A stretch of 63,777 nt of DNA, counting the filler, from Dugesia japonica (taxonomy: Eukaryota): the NCBI GenBank assembly GCA_001938525.1. It is 6 parts of 6 records of this genome, joined end to end, with 100 filler letters (N's around TTAATTAATTAA, not from the genome) between each part and the next. Parts side by side here need not be neighbours in the genome. Positions count along the whole stretch, not along the records: positions 21,595 to 33,344 come from MQRL01632970.1; 5 more parts are not named here. The stretch is one strand, 5' to 3'. Positions 21,151 through 33,444 of the stretch are shown here, one piece after another; positions within the stretch are counted from its first letter, which is position 1; each line of letters opens with the position of its first letter. The notes below the pieces were generated by a model. The model worked only from the letters and a program-made list of their open reading frames with translations. It was not told the origin of the DNA and made no database searches. The position numbers and the translations under genes are program-made.

Positions 21151-23249
21151 CAATGTTATACATATTTATACCGACTCCAGTTGAAATGACAACTGCCAGT
21201 ATTTTGAATATTAATCATGTTTGTATTTGTTATATGATATTTTTAATTTTGTTAATAAAATTTCTGAATTTATGGAATATCCTATTAAATATGTCATAAA
21301 TGAGTTTATATGTTTAGGTAAATATGAAGTTTTGAATTTACCAATACCTCTTGGTGAATATATTCTAATCAAACCCATGGAACTATATAATATGAACGGA
21401 AGAAATGTAACTAATGATAATGGTTTTACTAGTTTATCGCTAACCTCAAAATTGTAAGCAAAAAAACTACCTCAGTTGGAACTATGCACTATAGNNNNNN
21501 NNNNNNNNNNNNNNNNNNNNNNNNNNNNNNNNNNNNNNTTAATTAATTAANNNNNNNNNNNNNNNNNNNNNNNNNNNNNNNNNNNNNNNNNNNNTAATAT
21601 ATAATTATTTCTGTGTATTTATCATTTAAATAATAATTTAAATGTGATTTAAAATTAACATTATTTTACGCATTGATAAATATTTAGAAAAGTAATGATG
21701 AAGTTTATTCGTAATTTTTCATTCTTCATTGAAGACGCGAAGACTTCCTCTGTTAAAAGACTTAAAACTTTCTAAAAAAAAGAATACATCGAAAACTTTC
21801 TTTCATGATCATTATTATAATGAAAAATATTTACTGTTGTATTAATTGTAAATATAATTAATTTTTATAACTTACTAATTTATTCATAATTAATTAATTA
21901 TTATTGTTTTAAGTGAATAATAATTAAAGCAAAGCCACCACTAGAAATCTGGGATATCGACAAGTAGTATTTTGTTATTAAACTTGTTTATTTTTCTTTA
22001 TTTATAATTTATTACTGACGAGTTTCATGAAAGTTTATACTAAAATTAATTTTAATAAGTTATTAAATGTTCAGAATTTGTTTACTGAAAATTGCAATTT
22101 CAAATCTGAGAAAAAGTCGTTTTGATTATAAAAATGCTTTTCTTAACTGTTATTTTTCTATAGTAATAATTGATTTTTATTATTATTAACAAACAAACAG
22201 TCATAATAATTTGAATAGTTTGCATTTTGTATTCGGAATTTTGATTGATTATAATGGTTGTTAAGTATAAATGAGAACTGAATAAGAACTGATAATCAAA
22301 ATGTGAATTATACAACAATAATATATGTTTATATAGTGGAATCAGGTATAGCAATTATCCAATTGACCCTGTTGGTAATTAGATCATCACACAGTGAAAC
22401 ATCAGTTTTTTCAGATATGCACGCAAATATACAATTACATAACATAAAATATTTAATTACAATTAATTTAATTAATTTCATCTCACAATGGTTATTTAAC
22501 ATTTTCAGAATTGTTCATATTAGTCAATGCTATGTTATTAATATAATTTCCGTTAAAGCATTATTTTTTATTAAAATTTAATTTTAAAATACAATTTTCA
22601 ATAAATAATATTTTTTCAATAATTAATAAACAAAAAATAATAAACCGAAAATAATTCAAGATCTGAATTTTAAATTTAAACAAGCATTTAGATTTACAAA
22701 AAAATTTCTATATATAATGAATAAAAATGGGTTCATTTAAAGCAGATGTAACAAATTTCTAACTAATGATGGCCGCATTGCAATTATTTTACAACGGTCG
22801 CATAGTTAAAATGATATTTGTTTCTAAATTTATATGTCTAAAATATTGATATTTAATAAAAGTTGAACAAAAAGCTTTTTAAATAAACACTCAAATATTG
22901 TCAACAAACTCTTATTATAAATATTTTTTTCATTAAGTTACACACAAAATTTCAAAATTAACTAAAATGATTATCTCTAAAAATCAAAATATCTTTTAAA
23001 AGCAATAAACAGAACTAAAAACCCAAAATGATTATTTTACTATATTCTACAATCCTAAATTTTAGTATATCAACAAAATTTTNCACGGCCAAAATACTTA
23101 TTGACTACGACTTCAGGTTGCGCACCCCTGATTTAAAGCATTTAAAAATTAAATGAAGAAATTTTAATCATTTATTATTATTGATATTATTAATATTATT
23201 ATTAATATTGATATATTATTATTATTATTATTACTATTATCATTATTAA

Positions 23250-23289
<40 letters not shown>

Positions 23290-23319
23290 ATGCATATATG
23301 TGTATATTAGATGTAATTT

Positions 23320-25170
23320 TCAAATAATAATTAATCTTAATTAAAATTTCCGAAATGCAATAAATTTTGTTTAATATTTGTTATAAAAAAAGTCCGAATA
23401 GAGTTTCTAAACTATATTTTATATGACATCATCGGCTTCTATATATATTGTTTTAGAATCCATCAGTCTTGCGGAAATCTATGAAATAATAATACGTGAC
23501 TAAAACAAATAAATCAACATACCTAACATACACACATCCAAACAAACATATGATGTAGAAATATAATTCATGAGTTTATTAGTCCCAGCATGGCACAGAT
23601 TTTTGTGTTTCTATAACAAACTCCTGCTTTCTTTCTTCGGAAATATATATTTTATTTTTCTGAATAAAAACTATGTTTTTATAATATAACATTTTGTAGT
23701 AATCATAAACGTTATTGCCTTATGGTCTGCCCTTAAAATGGATTTCTTTTCATATATGTATTGTTAAAAATGTTGTGCAAAGTGAAAAATTGATAACAAT
23801 TTCTTCCTAGTTATGCAGTATCCAATTTCATGTTTTTTCATGCTTTTAGATCCATATGCAACGATGAATTCTTTTCCATATTCATCTTTTTGTGATAAAA
23901 CTGCGACTGTTGAATCGAAACTTGCATCTGTATCTAAAAATCCGTTTTCTGAAAATTTAGATTTCTTAATATTGGTGCCTTTGTGAGACTTTGTATTAAA
24001 CTTTTAAACGCTTCTTCACATTTTTCAGTCCAAACTAATTTTACATCTTTATTCCCAATTAATTTTTCCAATGGTCTGGCAATTTTTGAATAGTTTTTTT
24101 ATGAATTTGCGATAATAATTTGTTAGAACTCAAAAGCTACAAAGATGTTTCATGCATTGAGGTTTTCCAAAATTGTTTATCGCCGCTATCTTTGAATTAT
24201 CAGTTTTAATTCCTTCCTTATTTATAATAAGACCTAAGAACTTTAATTCGGATACTAAAATTTTGCAGTTTTTTGGATTTATTTTTAGCCTCAATTTCTT
24301 AATTCGTAAAAATATGTTTTCAATCTTTTCTTTATGTTCATTTAATTGTTTTAAACATACTAATATATCATCGAGATAAAACCGAGCTTCTTTCCACATC
24401 ATGTCTCCAATAACAATTGACATTAATTTTTGGAATGCCAATGGAGCAGCAGCAATACCAAACGGCATTCGATTAAAACAATATTTCCCATTTTAATAAA
24501 AAATACCGTCTTTAACTTACTAAAGTTCCTACTTCAAATGATAATATGCATTTCCTAAGTCTATGGATGGTAGATATTGTGCCCTATATATCGAATCAAG
24601 CATCTATTCCATTTTTGAAATTGGAAAAGCGGGTCTAACAGTTTATTTATTTAATAATCTGAAATCTAAGCACATTCTTATTTCATTTGATTCTTTTTTA
24701 TTAACGCATTAAATCGGAGAAGTCCATGAAGATTCACAATTTTTTATAATACCATTTTCTCCTAAATTATTTATAATTTCTACTATTTTTTTTTCGTAGT
24801 GCATTGGCTGCTTTCTAGCTTTCATTAATATCGGTTTGCAATCGGTTTCTATTTTATGTTTTAAAATGTCTGTTTTACCAATATCCCATTTATTGCTCAT
24901 AAAAATTTCAATATATCTGAGAACAATATCATGAATACTATTATCGTCATTTAATTAAATTTTTTTAATTAATTGTTCGCTACTATTCATACTTATATTA
25001 TTGGTTGAAAATTTAGCTTGTAAATTTAAAACTCTGGGATTTATATTATCTATTTCCATAAATTTTATTTGTAAAGAATATATAATATCTATTCCTAAAA
25101 TTATAAGGGGATAAATCTCTTCAGCATCACACAATATGAATAATAAATGCATTTGTGTTGAAACAATTTT
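23320..25170 (-). mobile_element. Ty3/Gypsy remnant (protease, RT, RNase H, LTR fragment)
   Basis: IILGID, KWDIGKT, SSWTSPI, CLDFR, MPFGIAAAP, YLDDILV, DTDASFD. Segment ~23400-23540 is inversely similar to ~28385-28480. Confidence 0.88.
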
Positions 25171-26010
25171 TTCTCAAATTTAATTTACCAAACTAAATTT
25201 GTTACTCAAAATAATTAATTAAAGTTTGTAAATAATTAAATAATAATTTCTAATACGGATTTCAGAACAGCATAAGATATTATAAATGATCTTTTTCAAA
25301 AACTTGATTTTTTTAGAATAATTTTCAATGAAACATCAGATAATTTCTACATAAAACAAATTACAATTAGTGAATAAATTATGATGATTTATAAATAAAG
25401 CTTAAAAGATGAACAATATGATAATAATGAGAAAAGGCAATAATTATTAGTGATGAAAGAACTAATAAATTAATTAACTAATTCAATTATTTTCTCAACA
25501 AAAAAACAGAAAAATTTAATTTAATCAATTAATATAATTACGTAATATTCTGCATGAACATTACTTCTTAAAATTCTGGCATTCATTCATATAATTATCA
25601 TAAATCGCGTGGTAAATATTTTCAATGAATTGTATTTTTAGTTGCATTTTTATGTAAACAAATTTATATTATGTTGTTTATAGTACATTGATTCATATGA
25701 TAATGAATCAATAAACTACAAATTAAATAATATTAGAAAATTTAAATTATATGAAATCGGAAGTTAAATAACAACAGGAATTTTAAAAAACATCAGAAAA
25801 AATGCAATGCTTTTAACTAATGTTGTTTACTTAGAATATTAATTCAGAAAAACAGTAATTGATTTGTAGATCCAAAAGCGTCACCAAGCTATGTTGTGTA
25901 TACAATGAGCATTCGAAATATCCATCATGAATTACAAACATAATAATAAGTATTCATTTAATATAAAAGCTTTGATCAAAATTTAGGTTTTAATTATTGA
26001 TATTGGATAA

Positions 26011-26047
26011 CAATTCGATATTTCGACCTTGTCTTCGTCAGGAATTG
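26011..26047 (-). ncRNA. Apparently intact minimal type I hammerhead ribozyme
   Basis: CAAUUC-CUGACGA-A-GAC-AAG-GUC-GAAA-UA-UC^GAAUUG: 6-bp stem I, 3-bp stem II, palindromic AUAU mini stem III. Predicted cut between 26017 and 26016. Confidence 0.85.
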
Positions 26048-26092
26048 ACTTTTTATACTTGACAAAAAGTAACAATATAATTGACAAAAAGT

Positions 26093-26129
26093 CAATTCCT
26101 GACAAAGACAAGGTCGAAAAATCGAATTG
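26093..26129 (+). ncRNA. Mutated hammerhead copy
   Basis: Same as 26011-26047 but CUGACAA (G8A) and GAAAAAUC. Confidence 0.7.
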
Positions 26130-27528
26130 TTATCCAATATCAATAACTAAAACCTAAATTTTGATCAAAGCTTTTATATTAAATGAATTCTATAAAACGA
26201 TCAATGGTTATGTCCAACAATTATTCTCGTAATAATTGCAATTGTAAAATAATAATAAGTTTTCAAAATAGTTCTTCGTTTGATTTTTCATTTCTAATTT
26301 CTATTTCCAGTGAAATATTGCAGTGATAAAATCTTTAATTCAGTTAATAACAAACTATAGGAATAATTAGGCTTGGACAAGCCTTAACCCCAGTTTAGGG
26401 CTCAATGATTTGGAGCCATTTTCGGGAGCTCAAAGCTCGATTAGCTTCACACAAATACTTTCCATCGTTTTACATTTAAATTTCTTTTTACCATGTTCAA
26501 ATGTTTTAATTCTATGTATGATATTTAAATATTTTTTACCTTAATTTATCATATTATAATAAATTGAGGAAGAAATTAGTTTAATTTATTCATTAAAATT
26601 GATTTATAAGTCAGCCACCGATTTTCATAATTCTGAGTATCTGCTTTTCTTTCCAAATCAATTTTAAATATTATTAAATAAAATTGTATTTGGCAAAGAC
26701 TGTTACACTGTTGAAAGTTTATTTGCAATTGAATACTAACCTGATAATAATTTATTGAAATCTTATTGATTACCTATAATATAACTAAAATAGTTTAAAT
26801 CTCATTTACTAAGTTTACTAAGTGCTTATATTATAGAAAAAGGTTAGAAAAAATAATACACATCATGCACGCACATAGATACACAAATAAGATTCATAGA
26901 AAAAATTAAAAATCATGTGAGCACAAATTGACATATATTCGAACAAATTAATTTCTTTTATTTTTGAGGATCAATTGTATTCTGTAAAACTTTTGTGAAC
27001 ACTTTTAACATAATAAAATCTTATCAAAGTATTCATTTTAAAAGAAATATAATAAAAAAAAATAGAAAATTATTTATCTATAAATTATTTGACATTTAAT
27101 TTATTACGTTGGAAATTCATTTAGTTTTAAAATATTTCATTTCAAAAAAAATTATTAGATTAATTTAATTAAATTTATTAATTTTCAAATTTTAATGTTA
27201 CAAATTTTACATATTTATCTCATAAATGTTAAATTTGTAAACTTAAAATAAAATAAACATATTACAATTGAAAGTACTCTTGATATTTCAAACCATTTCC
27301 CTAGTAGACCGTAAGGAAAGTCACCTGCGAGACTTGAAAGTTTTGCTATCCATGATATATTATGTCATATCTAAAATTAATTTAAATTAATGTTAATTGA
27401 ATTTAAAATAAAAGAATAAAATATAAAGTTGGTTTAAATAAAAGTTTATGTTTATTTATGATTTAGATTTAGCTCTAACGAGGGTTTCTCGTAATAATAG
27501 TAACAATAATAACAACAATAATAATATA

Positions 27529-27575
<47 letters not shown>

Positions 27576-27659
27576 NNNNNNNNNNNNNNNNNNNNNNNNN
27601 NNNNNNNNNNNNNNNNNNNNNNNNNNNNNNNNNNNNNNNNNNNNNNNNNNNNNNNNNNN

Positions 27660-27717
<58 letters not shown>

Positions 27718-28274
27718 GTAATAATCATTAATAGTTTTGATTTCATTTCTCCAGCTTTAATGTGTTCAAGTTTGTATCCAATAATCATGTTCCTCAAAAT
27801 AAGACAAATTTATTTTACTTGTCTGATTGTTTAAAATTCACATTTATTATTAATTTTACATTTACAGCACCATTCATTAAAATGTCTAAAAAAATTAAAG
27901 TTTTCTTAATTTATCTAAATTTGGAAATATGAAAATTAAAATGAAGAGATGAGTAAAAATGTTAACATAAATTTTTTGAGTATTTGGCATTTTGAATGAT
28001 TGCGTTTGATATTAGATACAGTTGGGAGTTTTCAATCTAGTAGATTTCAATTTCGATATGGCGACGAAAGATGAGATTAAAAATTGTTTTTCTTCTAAGA
28101 ATTGGCACAGGGTGTTACATTCTATTTTTCTTTTGTTAAAATGGTTAATTATAAAAATAAACTAATGAGAAGAAAGAAATTAACGAAAACCGGAAATTCA
28201 TATTTCTATTTTTTTAATTATATCAGATGATTAATGAATTAAAATGAATTAAATCTTTTTAAGTTTTATTATTA

Positions 28275-28326
<52 letters not shown>

Positions 28327-28327
<1 letters not shown>

Positions 28328-29568
28328 GTGAGATGATTAAATAATTACCTTTCATTACCAGTATAAATAAATTATGTCTGATTGCATGTGTGTATGATAA
28401 GGTATGTTGATTTATTTGTTTTAGTTACATTTTATTATTTCATAGATGATGTCATATGGTCAGAAAATATATTTTAAAAACTGTAGTTAGACTTCTTAAT
28501 AACATGGCGACCTTTATCAACGAAAGATTTGTTACAAATATTACTTCAGCCAATAATATTCACTGTAAATGATTATATGAAAGAATGCTTGAAGTACATG
28601 GAACAATGATTCAGCTCGACAACAACCAACGAAATATTGTTAGTAGAGTATAGCCAGATGAAGTGTCAAGATTGAAATTTGATCAAAAAGCAACAGAAGA
28701 AAATTATGAAAAAACAATCCGAAATGCAATTTTTAAAAGTCCAGATTCAGCAGACGATCTGATCAGTTAGCTCAAATACAATAGAGGAAACAATTCAGTG
28801 GATATATTTATTTCAAACTAACCAGCACTAAATTGATCGTAATTTTCCTGAAGTATTGTGTTGACAATGATGCACAGAACAATTAAATTCAAAGATATGA
28901 GTTGACTAAAGATTTTTTAAGAAAATTATTTGAAGAAGATCAACAAAAAAAATCTAAAAATGTATAGAGAGGTCCAACTACATGCAAATACATAAAAATT
29001 GTTTTGCATTGCATTGATTTTAAAAAATGTGGCACAAATCAATGCGATAGAAAACAAGCATATGCTAGAGTGTTAACAGATCAAAGATATTCGAATTATA
29101 ATATGCCTTGAATATACAGAAATGATCCAAGACAAATTCTAGAAATTCAGCAATCAAAGAAATTTACAATAAAAAACAAAAGATTTCCATTCAATATACA
29201 ATGCCTCAACAAATAAGACAAATTTTATCCAGAAAGTAGAGAAAAAAGAAAATATTTTCAATTTAATAAAAATGAAGAATCCAGACAATGTTATGGATGC
29301 CAAGAATTCGGCCACTTATTTGGTTGTCCAAATATCCGATGTTATGTTTGTAATCAAAGAGTTATAAATGTTACCATTGAGGAGATACCATAAACAGAAT
29401 GAATATTCGATTCCAAGTCAAAGATTAAAATGATGACAAATACTATAGAAATGACAGATACTATCCTGCTAATAAACAAAACCATGTTACTGCTCTATAT
29501 GATGAGGAAACATGAGAAATAGATGCTAACAATGATGATTCGGGAAATGCCAAGGCTCTAGTCAACGG
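28327..29568 (+). mobile_element. Gypsy LTR fragment plus decayed gag
   Basis: TGGCGACC PBS-like motif at 28505; zinc-knuckle remnants CYGCQEFGHL and CYVCNQ; TCGGGAAAT gag-pol junction-like motif at ~29540. Confidence 0.65.
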
Positions 29569-32500
29569 GAACTTTTAAAAATGTTTTAAAAAGAGAANGT
29601 TTTACGTTTTTTTAATATTTCAGTTTTGTAAAGTAGTTTGACGAAAACTTTTATTTTGAAAAGTAAATTTTGTATACTTTTTTAAAATTTGTTCATTGTA
29701 ATTTATTTGTAATTTAAGTGTTGATTTATTTGTAATCAAGTTGTAAATTATTTTTAATCGATAATTATATTTATTTATAATATATTTTATACAAAGATTG
29801 TTAATTCTTGTTTTCAGTAATTTATTGTAATAGATACAAAGGAAGAAAATATTATTAATGAGGTGCGTATTCCTCACATAGTGGCAGTGGTAAGTACCGA
29901 CTCAATCACCGAATGTCTATTGCCAAAAATAATTTGTAAGGTGAAGATATTGAAAAATTTATTAAAAGGACTGAATTATATTCTGATGCGAAAGGTATCA
30001 ACCAGAAGAAAGAACAGGAGAGAATAGTTTTTTGTTTATTGGATGAAGATTTAGTAGAAGATTATGTATAGACGGCAAAGAAGACGGAAGGCTTTCAATC
30101 ATGATTACAATTGGCGTTCGAAAAAAGGATATAAAAGAAGAATTTCAGAATTTAGTAAAATTTAAAAACCGTGGAGAATCTGGTTGACAGGATATTTGAT
30201 AACAAAGACTTTACGAAAGAGAAATAAAGGAATGTTGGTTGTGTCATAGAAAGGGGCATTTGAGTAGAGAGTGTCTAGAAAGACGACCTGCCACATGTTT
30301 TGGATGTGGGAAAGTATAACACATATGAANNNNNNNNNNNNNNNNNNNNNNNNNNNNNNNNNNNNNNNNNNNNNNNNNNNNNNNNNNNNNNNNNNNNNNN
30401 NNNNNNNNNNNNNNNNNNNNNNNNNNNNNNNNNNNNNNNNNNAAAAAAACAAGGAATGAAGAAAGGAATCGATATAATCAATTTAATATGAAAGAAAAAG
30501 AATGTAGATAAAAACAACATGTAAACTGCGAGATAGATGACAAGAAATGAAATACTTTCATNAACAAGTGGGCTAGCTTTCCCAATGCCAAATATTAACG
30601 AGATGTTAGATGCATTGGATGGAGCAAGATCTTTTAGTTCGATTGATTTAGGAAACTCTCACTTCCAAGTGGAGTTGGAAGAGGAGTTGCAAGAAAAAAC
30701 TGAATTCTCAATCAAACAGGTGCAATAATGTAATGGAATAGCTACAGAACCGGGTATGTTCCAAGAAATGATGACGAAAGTGATTTGAGGAATAGCAGGT
30801 GTACTTGGTATACTTGGATGACATCTTGGTTTTTTGAAGAGTAGAAAGCAACATTATTAAATCATTGACAGGGTATTAGACAGTATTTTAAAAGCCAGAT
30901 TGTGTGTAAACTCGAAAAAATGTCAGTTCATAAGGAGTGAAATTAAGGTTTTGGGATAAATTATTTGCAAGAAAGGGGTCCGGACAGATTTGACGAAGAT
31001 TAAAGCTATAAAAACCTTCAGACGACCAAATGGCGTAAAAACCTACATAGTTTTCTAGGAACTTGCAATTATAATCGAAAATTTATAAAAGAGTAAGGAA
31101 TTAAGGCCAGACACTTGGAACAACTATGCTGTGGCCCAAGTAATAAAAGGTTGGATTGGACTAATGAAGTGGATGAATTTTTCAAGGTTTAAAAGGTGCA
31201 TTAATGTCGGCGCCGATTCTAAATTTCCCAGATTTGAGCAAAGATTTTAGACACAGACGGCAGTTTTAAAACCATAGAAGCAGTATTATCTCAGAAAGAC
31301 AATCAGGGTAGGTAAAGAGTGCTAGCTTATGTATCGCATGCAATTTCGGCAGAGGAGAAAGGTTATTGTATTACCAGAATTGAATTATTGGCAGTATACT
31401 TTTTCTGTGTACATTTTACACCTTATCTTTATGGACGGAAATTCACATTAAGGACAGATCAAGAAGCAATAATGTTTATGTTGACAACTAAAAAGACAAT
31501 AACATTGCTGTTTCAGACGTGGATCAATTACCTAAGCAGTTTAGATATGGTACTGGAATATAGGAAAAGCGTTCTTCACAGAAATGCAGATATACTATCT
31601 AGCCCTGGTTGGGAGCGATGTGTTCAATATCAGACGATATATGAAGATNCAATGAAAGGAAAGATTAAAACTAGAACATTGAATGAAATTTCAGAAGATT
31701 TCAAGATAAAGCTAAGAAACGAAACAAATAGAAATAAGATAAATACAAAAGGTTGGATTGTAGAGAATCAAATAAAAGATAAGATTCAAGAGATACATAA
31801 GTTATTGTGTCACACGGGTGTGGAAAAGAAACAAGAATATATGAAGAATATTTTTTAAGGACCACAGTTGAGAAAACGGATTCTGGAAGTTGTACGTAGC
31901 TGTGAAATCTGTCAGAGAACTAAAGCGGAGACCTTGACTATTAAAGAAGTAACAATGACATCGGAGACGTTTAGTTGTTTCAAGATAGTGTATGTAGACA
32001 TTTGTGGACCATGGAGAGAAACAAAAGGCAGAAAGAAATATAAACTGATAATGATTGATCAGTATAGTAAGTATATAGTACTGGTAGCATTATCACGTCA
32101 AGATAAAGTAGTAATTGTAGAGTCATTTTTAAGAATTGAATCTTGCAATTTAAATGCTNNNNNNNNNNNNNNNNNNNNNNNNNGGAAGGTATTTGAATAA
32201 AAGGTTATGAAAGAATTTTCAGATAAATTCAATATCGAATTACAAACATCAAGCCCGTATCATCATAATACAAACGGACAGATTAAAAGACATATAAAAA
32301 AGACTACACAAATAAGCCTTGCACAATTAGTATTTGGAAAACATATTAATAGAAAAAATGGTATACAAATGAGGGTATCAGTTGGGTTAAAAAGAGTAGA
32401 AAAAGTCAAACAAAAAGACAGGTCGAAATAGGTGATCAGGTTTTAGTCAAGGCAGAAGTTAGAGATAAAAATCAGGACAGATTTGTAGGACCATGTCAAG

Positions 32501-32924
32501 TTATCGGGAAGGTTCATGAGAGAAGATATTTTCTTGAAGCAGAGAATGGCAATCAGATCGACAGATTTATAGAAAAAATTTAAAAAATTCTTAAATGAGG
32601 GAGATAAAAGGCGAACTTTTAAAAATGTTTTAAAATGAGAATTTTATACGTTGTTTTAATATTTCAGTATTTTAAAGTTATTTGGTGAAAATTTGTATTT
32701 TGAGAAGTAAATTTTGTATACTTTTTTTAAAATTTGTTCATTGTAATTTATTTGTAATTTAAGTCTTGATTTATTGGTAATCAAGTTGTAAATTATTTGT
32801 AATTAATAATTATATTTATTTATAATATTTTTTATCAAAAGATTGTTAATTCTGATTTTCAGTAAATTATTTGTAATAGATACAAAGGAACAAAATATTA
32901 TTAATGAGATGCGTATTTCTCACA
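29569..32924 (+). mobile_element. Ty3/Gypsy element with paired ~310-bp LTRs, internally deleted
   Basis: LTRs 29569-29878 and 32613-32924 both end CTCACA; TGGCAGTGG after the 5' LTR; purine tract at ~32597; RT (FPMPNI, FSSIDL), RNase H (YCITRIELLAV, LRTD), integrase (H-H-C-C, VDICGP, SPYHHNTNG). Confidence 0.92.
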
Positions 32925-33444
32925 TTAATAAAATGTGTACGAGTATGTTAGAGTGTGATGATGATTGTTTTAATAATTTTAATAATAGTATTGGTGTNAT
33001 TGAAAATGACTCAATTATTGACTGTATATTTAAAAACATGAATTATGAAAATAGATTGACTGAGACATATATGTTTAAATTTTTGAATGTTATTAATTAT
33101 TATTACATTGATGGTAGACCATTTAATAATATTAAACTAAAATATATATATCAATCCAAATTTGGAAACAATCACCCGAAGATAAGTATTAAAAAGGATG
33201 CAAATATTAAATACCGGCCAACTCGCTTTCAAGAAGATACACATTTCGAACAAAGCATACCGATACAAAGACAAAGTCAGTACAATAATTTCCAGCAGTA
33301 TTCATTGAAACATCTAGCAAATAAACTATATTGTAAACCTAAAGNNNNNNNNNNNNNNNNNNNNNNNNNNNNNNNNNNNNNNNNNNNNTTAATTAATTAA
33401 NNNNNNNNNNNNNNNNNNNNNNNNNNNNNNNNNNNNNNNNNNNN

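What the first reader, a model, noticed from the sequence alone, without database searches (positions are those of the whole stretch)
25940..26260. Dispersed family of hammerhead-bearing palindromic mini-retroelements
Seen: at least 10 related insertions in all six independent scaffolds (1-152, 10857, 12905, 14258, 15955, 25952, 33445, 38905, 53762, 63714). Complete copies read direct repeat / inverted arm / sense arm / ~60-nt tail / direct repeat. The arm carries CUGA(C/A)GA-A-stem II-GAAA-UA-UH. Known: Penelope-like elements carry minimal hammerheads in pLTRs and often have inverted 5' pLTRs. Inference: this is a very abundant (about one per 6 kb here), ORF-less, ribozyme-linked family mobilised by a Penelope RT. 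It could be non-autonomous retrozyme-like elements or extreme truncations.
Basis: partly seen in the sequence, partly recalled or inferred. Interest (0 to 1): 0.85.

Follow-up and report, generated by a model that had tools for sequence, protein, structure and literature searches.

The report
Inverted Penelope-like remnant with hammerhead motif
This is a 297-base, gene-less insertion made of two head-to-head copies of a retrotransposon end that carries a minimal hammerhead-ribozyme motif, which is the layout already described for Penelope-like elements, so it is real but ordinary.

Summary
A 12-nt direct repeat (25940-25951 and 26249-26260) brackets two 103-nt inverted arms, a 31-nt centre and a 60-nt tail on one side only. 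The left arm, read on the minus strand, holds a complete minimal hammerhead motif. It is the only such motif in the 11.75-kb piece, and chance predicts about 0.001 per piece. The tail-linked arm has a degenerate version of the motif.

No Rfam hammerhead model reaches significance. The hammerhead fold is not the preferred fold of a lone arm. A transcript through the whole element would fold into one long hairpin.

No ORF with a Pfam domain lies within about 4 kb, and nothing in the piece encodes a Penelope RT or GIY-YIG nuclease.

Published Penelope-like insertions show the same features: a head-to-head inverted terminal copy, a one-sided tail, a short target duplication, palindromes at the inverted junction and a minimal hammerhead.

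Only one copy lies in the piece I was given. The claims of at least 10 copies, one per 6 kb, and of a dedicated non-autonomous family are therefore untested.

Verdict: a new member of a known kind, of low to moderate interest.

The parts
25940..25951 (.). Left copy of the 12-nt direct repeat (target-site duplication), ATAATAATAAGT
   Evidence: This 12-mer occurs only at 25940 and 26249 in the piece. The chance rate for such a flanking recurrence is about 4e-4.
25952..26054 (-). Inverted arm: a 103-nt copy of the element end, sense on the minus strand, with no tail
   Evidence: the repeat finder I1, arm alignment, 103 nt with 3 differences from the other arm.
26011..26047 (-). Complete minimal type I hammerhead motif. 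It has a 6-bp helix I, CUGANGA, one unpaired nucleotide, a 3-bp helix II with a 3-nt loop, GAAA, a 2-nt palindromic spacer and UH.
   Evidence: It is the only canonical hit of the descriptor in the piece on either strand. Simulations gave a hit in 2 of 2000 runs, and in 0 of 2000 with helix I of 6 bp or more. The boxes align with the only hammerhead model Rfam returns, at 15 bits, far below its gathering score of 56.3.
26055..26085 (.). 31-nt centre at the head-to-head junction. It holds one copy of a 12-nt direct duplication (26059-26070 = 26081-92) and parts of two 7-bp mini-palindromes.
   Evidence: It matches the 'palindromes at the inverted junction' that PMC3846280 reports for Penelope insertions.
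26086..26188 (+). Sense arm: a 103-nt copy of the element end, joined to the tail
26093..26129 (+). Degenerate copy of the hammerhead motif. It departs from the core consensus at one invariant position and at one of the two nucleotides between GAAA and UH.
   Evidence: The descriptor finds it only when one core position is relaxed. Two of the three arm differences fall inside this stretch.
26189..26248 (+). 60-nt unique extension ('tail') present at one end only
   Evidence: It is absent beside the left arm, where the direct repeat abuts the arm. It has no significant fold (z = -1.1) and no coding match.
26249..26260 (.). Right copy of the 12-nt direct repeat

Best explanation
This is one insertion event of a Penelope-like retroelement that left only terminal sequence. 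Two head-to-head copies of the hammerhead-bearing 3' end (or pseudo-LTR) are present. One carries the optional tail, and no coding part lies between them.

Shown:
- a 12-nt duplication of an A/T-rich, (TAA)-like target;
- 103-nt arms that are 97% identical;
- a junction with a short duplication and mini-palindromes;
- a minimal hammerhead motif in the arms.

Inferred:
- a GIY-YIG nuclease made staggered nicks about 12 nt apart;
- reverse transcription was primed at the target from the tail end of the RNA and stopped, or reached the template's 5' end, 14 nt upstream of the ribozyme box;
- the inverted copy arose by self-priming or snap-back at the junction palindromes, or by priming on the second nick;
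- the RT and nuclease came from an autonomous element elsewhere in the genome.

The hammerhead is a passenger of the terminal repeat. In this palindromic copy it is probably inactive. One arm has lost the core consensus, and any transcript through both arms would fold into a hairpin of about -150 kcal/mol.
For: - Anatomy is measured.
- The hammerhead motif is unique in the piece and is far above chance.
- PMC3846280 describes Penelope inserts with an adjacent inverted pLTR, an optional 31-bp tail at the 3' end of one inverted pLTR, TSDs of 8-10 bp, palindromes at the inverted junction read as self-priming, solo pLTRs, and integration in trans with pLTRs alone.
- PMC8557442 describes heavy 5' truncation, an inverted 5'-truncated copy and a one-sided 30-40 bp tail.
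- PMC4209133 describes PLE minimal hammerheads with an unpaired nucleotide before helix II, G10.1-C11.1 and a palindromic 15.2-16.2. It also reports pairs of motifs on opposite strands 100-700 bp apart, and most motifs as lone remnants of truncated PLEs. All of these features are present here.
- No ORF of 35 aa or more with a Pfam domain lies in 25153-29560.
Against: - No Penelope RT or GIY-YIG sequence is in the piece, and no full-length element sharing this end could be sought.
- Helix II is 3 bp, whereas PMC4209133 reports 6-8 bp as typical for PLE motifs.
- The tail is 60 nt against the 30-40 nt reported.
- No Rfam hammerhead model matches at a meaningful score.
- The hammerhead fold of a lone arm (-5.3 kcal/mol) is weaker than its minimum-energy fold (-10.3).
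- Two of the three differences between the arms fall inside the motif, so this copy shows no sign that the motif is kept better than its flanks.
- There is a single copy, so there is no covariation and no distribution of arm ends.
Confidence: 0.7

Rival explanations
1. It belongs to a dedicated, abundant, ORF-less non-autonomous family: a fixed palindromic unit with its own tail that parasitises a Penelope RT. On this reading it is not a by-product of abortive insertion of an autonomous element.
For: - Both arms end at the same internal point, 14 nt upstream of the box, at a 7-bp mini-palindrome. A fixed unit boundary would give this.
- PMC3846280 shows that pLTRs alone suffice for integration in trans.
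- The 2026 preprint 10.64898/2026.07.22.740005 derives animal retrozymes from PLE pLTRs.
Against: - I had one copy only, and no related sequence turned up in six collection scans.
- Equal arm ends are also what snap-back self-priming gives.
- The retrozyme layout of head-to-tail units with same-strand ribozymes is not met.
Confidence: 0.2
2. It is not Penelope-related. It could be a foldback or MITE-type DNA transposon, or a twin-primed LINE/SINE remnant, or a local inverted duplication. On this reading the hammerhead-like motif is a coincidence.
For: - Long hairpins are common in MITEs.
- No hammerhead covariance model matches.
- Helix II is only 3 bp.
- The duplicated target is low-complexity and (TAA)-like in a genome full of such repeats.
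Against: - The direct repeat does not abut the right arm but lies 60 nt beyond it, and the sequences directly flanking the two arm ends do not match. The two ends of the inserted unit are therefore not inverted repeats of each other.
- The chance of the motif is about 0.001 per piece and of the flanking 12-mer about 4e-4.
- The element has no poly(A) end.
Confidence: 0.07
3. It is a hairpin-RNA or microRNA precursor gene.
For: Many Rfam miRNA-precursor models match the hairpin on both strands with small E-values. The hairpin is very stable.
Against: - Every match is below its family's gathering score.
- The matches are to many unrelated families, mostly plant ones, and occur on both strands. 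Any 100-bp perfect hairpin gives this result.
- The target duplication and the tail mark an insertion, not a gene.
Confidence: 0.03

Closest known systems
Penelope-like element insertions with an inverted pLTR and tail (for example Pen2a_Av of Adineta vaga, PMC3846280; general scheme in PMC8557442, Fig. 2)
   Same: Both have a head-to-head inverted terminal copy, an optional extension at the 3' end of only one of the inverted copies, a short target duplication, palindromes at the inverted junction and a hammerhead motif in the terminal repeat.
   Different: Here nothing lies between the inverted copies: there is no ORF and no second direct pLTR. The arms are 103 nt against 181-218 bp, the tail is 60 nt against about 31-40, and the duplication is 12 bp against 8-10.
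Minimal hammerheads of metazoan PLEs (Cervera and de la Pena 2014, PMC4209133)
   Same: [quoted passage not shown] That paper also reports pairs on opposite strands 100-700 bp apart and lone motifs attributed to truncated PLEs.
   Different: Helix II is 3 bp with a 3-nt loop, against the 6-8 bp described as typical. The two motifs are only 46 nt apart. One of the two has lost the core consensus.
Metazoan non-LTR retrozymes (PMC7229834; bioRxiv 10.64898/2026.07.22.740005)
   Same: Both are small, ORF-less and AT-rich, carry a type I hammerhead, have duplications longer than 4 bp, and are thought to depend on PLEs.
   Different: Retrozymes are head-to-tail tandem units with canonical hammerheads on one strand, which excise a circular RNA of 170-400 nt. 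Here the two motifs face each other on opposite strands, so no unit is bracketed by two same-strand ribozymes.

Membership tests
Penelope-like element (autonomous) | A single ORF with a telomerase-like RT and a GIY-YIG endonuclease | tested here: not met
   No ORF of 35 aa or more in 25153-29560 has any Pfam match. The only RT, RNase H and integrase matches in the piece belong to LTR-type elements elsewhere.
Penelope-like element (insertion remnant) | An inverted 5'-truncated or pLTR copy adjacent head to head | tested here: met
   Arms 25952-26054 and 26086-26188 are 97% complementary, with their 5' ends facing the centre.
Penelope-like element (insertion remnant) | A short extension (tail) at one end of the insert only | tested here: met
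   A 60-nt unique stretch, 26189-26248, lies between the right arm and the direct repeat. There is none on the left. It is longer than the 30-40 bp reported.
Penelope-like element (insertion remnant) | A short target-site duplication around the whole insert | tested here: met
   A 12-nt exact repeat occurs only at 25940 and 26249 in the piece.
Penelope-like element (insertion remnant) | The same terminal sequence ends a full-length RT/GIY-YIG element in the same genome | not testable with these tools
PLE minimal hammerhead (PMC4209133) | Core boxes CUGANGA and GAAA, then U-H, closed by helix I | tested here: met
   This is met in the left arm on the minus strand, with a perfect 6-bp helix I. 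The right arm fails at one invariant core position.
PLE minimal hammerhead (PMC4209133) | [quoted passage not shown] | tested here: met
   All three are read directly from the left arm. The palindromic spacer is lost in the right arm.
PLE minimal hammerhead (PMC4209133) | A long helix II (6-8 bp) | tested here: not met
   Helix II is 3 bp with a 3-nt loop.
PLE minimal hammerhead (PMC4209133) | Covariation in the helices across copies, and self-cleavage | not testable with these tools
   Only one copy is available. Between its two arms the helices do not vary.
Rfam hammerhead families (canonical types I, II, III, HH9, HH10) | A match at or above the family's gathering score | tested here: not met
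   The only hammerhead hit is RAGATH-1-hammerhead at 14-15 bits against a gathering score of 56.3, with E of 1.2-8.7 even on a 67-323 nt search. There is none at E <= 1 on the whole piece.
Metazoan non-LTR retrozyme | Head-to-tail tandem units, each with a canonical type I hammerhead on the same strand | tested here: not met
   The two motifs are on opposite strands. There is no direct tandem of the unit.
MITE / foldback DNA transposon | Terminal inverted repeats flanked directly by the target duplication on both sides | tested here: not met
   The right-hand repeat lies 60 nt beyond the arm, and the bases directly flanking the two arm ends do not match.
microRNA precursor families | A match at or above the Rfam gathering score | tested here: not met
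   The best match is MIR7504 at 73.6 bits against 83. All others are far below. Hits fall on both strands and on unrelated families.

The most novel reading that the evidence does not exclude
The palindromic unit is not debris. It is a fixed, very abundant, ORF-less family, a hairpin-shaped pair of Penelope terminal repeats with its own tail, that amplifies in trans at a density near one per 6-12 kb. This would be a third style of ribozyme-linked non-autonomous retroelement, beside plant LTR retrozymes and animal tandem retrozymes, and a large source of hairpin RNA.
Probability: 0.2. Interest if true: 0.5.

Novelty: new member of a known kind. Interest (0 to 1): 0.25.

Why it matters
It matters mainly for annotation. 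Such hairpin-shaped, gene-less remnants are easily mislabelled as MITEs or as microRNA precursors; many Rfam miRNA models light up on this one, all below their thresholds. Recognising the Penelope signature avoids that error: a head-to-head copy, a one-sided tail, a target duplication and a minimal hammerhead.

It could be used to read covariation in a very short-helix-II hammerhead, and to see where Penelope reverse transcription stops and turns back. No open question is settled by this single copy.

Tried and rejected
- **Rfam scans.** I scanned the whole piece, the element and the lone arm. There was no hammerhead family at a meaningful score. The miRNA-precursor hits are generic hairpin matches below every gathering score, so the miRNA reading is rejected.
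- **Search for more copies in the piece.** A sensitive blastn of the element against the piece gave only AT-rich noise and no second copy.
- **Public collection scans.** I ran exact and degenerate pattern scans with the ribozyme stretch and with the distal arm: metagenome contigs twice, bacterial and archaeal genomes twice, viral contigs twice. All gave 0 hits.
- **Literature.** A full-text search for the motif string gave 0 papers. No supplements are held for PMC4209133.
- **Protein route to the source organism.** I used the neighbouring LTR-element fragments. They found only 41-70% identical fragments on short unnamed metagenome contigs, so the organism stays unknown.
- **MITE or foldback reading.** Rejected on the placement of the duplication.
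- **Retrozyme reading.** Rejected on strand arrangement.
- **Alternative hammerhead register.** The Rfam alignment offers a 9-position helix III with two mismatches and a 3-bp helix I. I noted it and judged it weaker than the minimal register with a perfect 6-bp helix I.
- **Not done.** I built no consensus and no covariance model of the element. The N runs were left unfilled.

Full report
**Scope.** I worked only on the piece 21595-33344. It is about 22% G+C and rich in (TAA)n arrays. It contains eight N runs, which I left as they are. Nothing suggested human origin. The source organism remains unknown.

**The observation.**
- The 12-mer ATAATAATAAGT occurs exactly twice in the piece, at 25940 and 26249.
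- I tested every position of the piece for the 12-mer just upstream recurring within 120 nt beyond a 237-nt span. It did so at 4 of 11,066 positions, one of which is this one.
- Between the two repeats lie a 103-nt arm (25952-26054), a 31-nt centre (26055-26085), the complementary 103-nt arm (26086-26188) and a 60-nt unique stretch (26189-26248).
- The arms differ at 3 of 103 positions.
- The left repeat abuts its arm directly, whereas the right repeat is separated from its arm by the 60-nt tail. The inserted unit is therefore asymmetric, and its two ends are not inverted repeats of one another.

**The hammerhead motif.**
- Read on the minus strand, the left arm contains helix I (6 bp, perfect), CUGANGA, one unpaired nucleotide, helix II (3 bp starting with G-C, 3-nt loop), GAAA, a two-nucleotide palindromic spacer, U-H, and the return strand of helix I.
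- I wrote a deliberately relaxed descriptor: helix I of at least 4 bp, an optional bulge, helix II of 3-8 bp, a loop of 3-8 nt and a spacer of 0-4 nt. On both strands of the piece it finds exactly this site and nothing else.
- First-order Markov sequences of the same composition gave at least one hit in 2 of 2000 runs, and none with helix I of 6 bp or more. The motif is not a chance match.
- The other arm, which is the one joined to the tail, is found only if one invariant core position is relaxed. It also differs in the spacer. It lacks the compensating partner change that PMC4209133 reports for a natural core variant.
- So two of the three arm differences fall within the roughly 27-nt ribozyme stretch. 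About 0.8 would be expected. This is not significant, and it is no sign of the motif being kept better than its flanks.
In this copy that is not where the arms differ.

**Limits of the ribozyme call.**
- No Rfam hammerhead family matches at E <= 1 on the piece.
- On the element alone, and on the lone arm, the only hammerhead hit is RAGATH-1-hammerhead at 14-15 bits against a gathering score of 56.3. Its alignment does line up the two boxes. It proposes another register, with a mismatched helix III and a 3-bp helix I, which I judge weaker.
- The hammerhead secondary structure of a lone arm is worth -5.3 kcal/mol, against -10.3 for its minimum-energy fold.
- A transcript through the whole element folds into one hairpin of -151 to -160 kcal/mol.
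- PMC4209133 reports that such minimal motifs escape canonical descriptors, are thought to act as dimers, and cleave poorly in vitro. These negatives are therefore expected for the class, but catalysis here is unshown.
- In this palindromic copy, with one degenerate arm, activity is unlikely.

**What it is.** Published descriptions of Penelope-like elements fit point by point.
- PMC3846280 describes the typical insert as bounded by pLTRs with an adjacent inverted pLTR. [quoted passage not shown] Palindromes at the inverted junction are read there as self-priming. The paper also reports solo pLTRs, and integration in trans when only pLTRs are present.
- PMC8557442 describes heavy 5' truncation, an inverted 5'-truncated copy next to the upstream end, and a one-sided 30-40 bp tail.
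- PMC4209133 places minimal hammerheads in the pLTRs. [quoted passage not shown] It notes pairs of motifs on opposite strands 100-700 bp apart and a majority of lone motifs attributed to truncated PLEs.
- In this copy the junction holds a 12-nt direct duplication (26059-26070 = 26081-26092) and two 7-bp mini-palindromes, one of them exactly at the inner end of the sense arm.
- No ORF of 35 aa or more between 25153 and 29560 has any Pfam match.

**Mechanism (inferred).**
- An RT and GIY-YIG nuclease supplied by an autonomous element elsewhere nicked an A/T-rich, (TAA)-like site with a stagger of about 12 nt.
- Reverse transcription was primed at the target from the tail end of the RNA. It ended 14 nt upstream of the ribozyme box.
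- The second, inverted copy was made by snap-back self-priming at the junction palindromes, or by priming at the second nick.
- The target duplication, the arm geometry and the junction features are shown. The enzymes and the order of events are inferred from the literature on the family.

**What remains open.**
- These claims are a family of at least 10 copies at about one per 6 kb, and a dedicated non-autonomous or retrozyme-like element.
- The piece holds one copy. Six scans of public collections found no relative, and a text search for the motif found nothing.
- The retrozyme comparison fails on a defining feature. Retrozymes are head-to-tail units with same-strand canonical hammerheads that release a circle (PMC7229834). 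Here the motifs face each other.
- That both arms end at the same internal point fits a fixed unit boundary and fits snap-back synthesis equally well.
- I put 0.7 on a Penelope-type terminal-repeat insertion and, as a separate sub-reading, 0.2 on a dedicated family.

- I have not repeated those places here and have deleted nothing.

**Verdict.** This is a real, well-delimited insertion with a genuine minimal hammerhead motif. Its kind is already described in the literature, so it is a new member of a known kind. Interest is 0.25.

Noticed in passing
window 29569-32925: This is a short LTR retrotransposon on the plus strand. Its LTRs of about 311-313 nt lie at 29569-29879 and 32613-32925 and are roughly 88-90% alike. 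Its pol remnant (30537-32431) has RT, RNase H and integrase matches. It is decayed, with at least two in-frame stops and at least one frameshift. The internal part is far too short for gag and protease. Several N runs lie inside and were left unfilled.
   Followed up: partly
window 24130-25152 (minus strand): This is a second decayed LTR-type pol remnant. It has an RVT_1 match at E 1.6e-14. It is split into three ORF pieces in one frame, so it has at least two in-frame stops. The nearest database relatives are only 41-55% identical.
   Followed up: partly
window 32843-33344 and beyond the piece's edge: An open frame of more than 167 aa starts inside the 3' LTR and runs off the end of the piece. 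That is unusually long for 20% G+C DNA. It has no Pfam match. It could be the gag of an adjoining tandem element that shares the LTR.
   Followed up: partly
window 23172-23291, 27492-27575, 27660-27725, 28266-28327: These are four (TAA)n/(TTA)n microsatellite arrays, two of them either side of an 84-nt N run at 27576-27659. The target duplication of the insertion is itself (TAA)-like.
   Followed up: no
window 26360-26450: This is a G+C-richer island of about 90 nt, roughly 100 nt downstream of the insertion, with a 7-bp palindrome at its start. It has no Rfam match, no tRNA and no significant fold. It is unexplained.
   Followed up: partly
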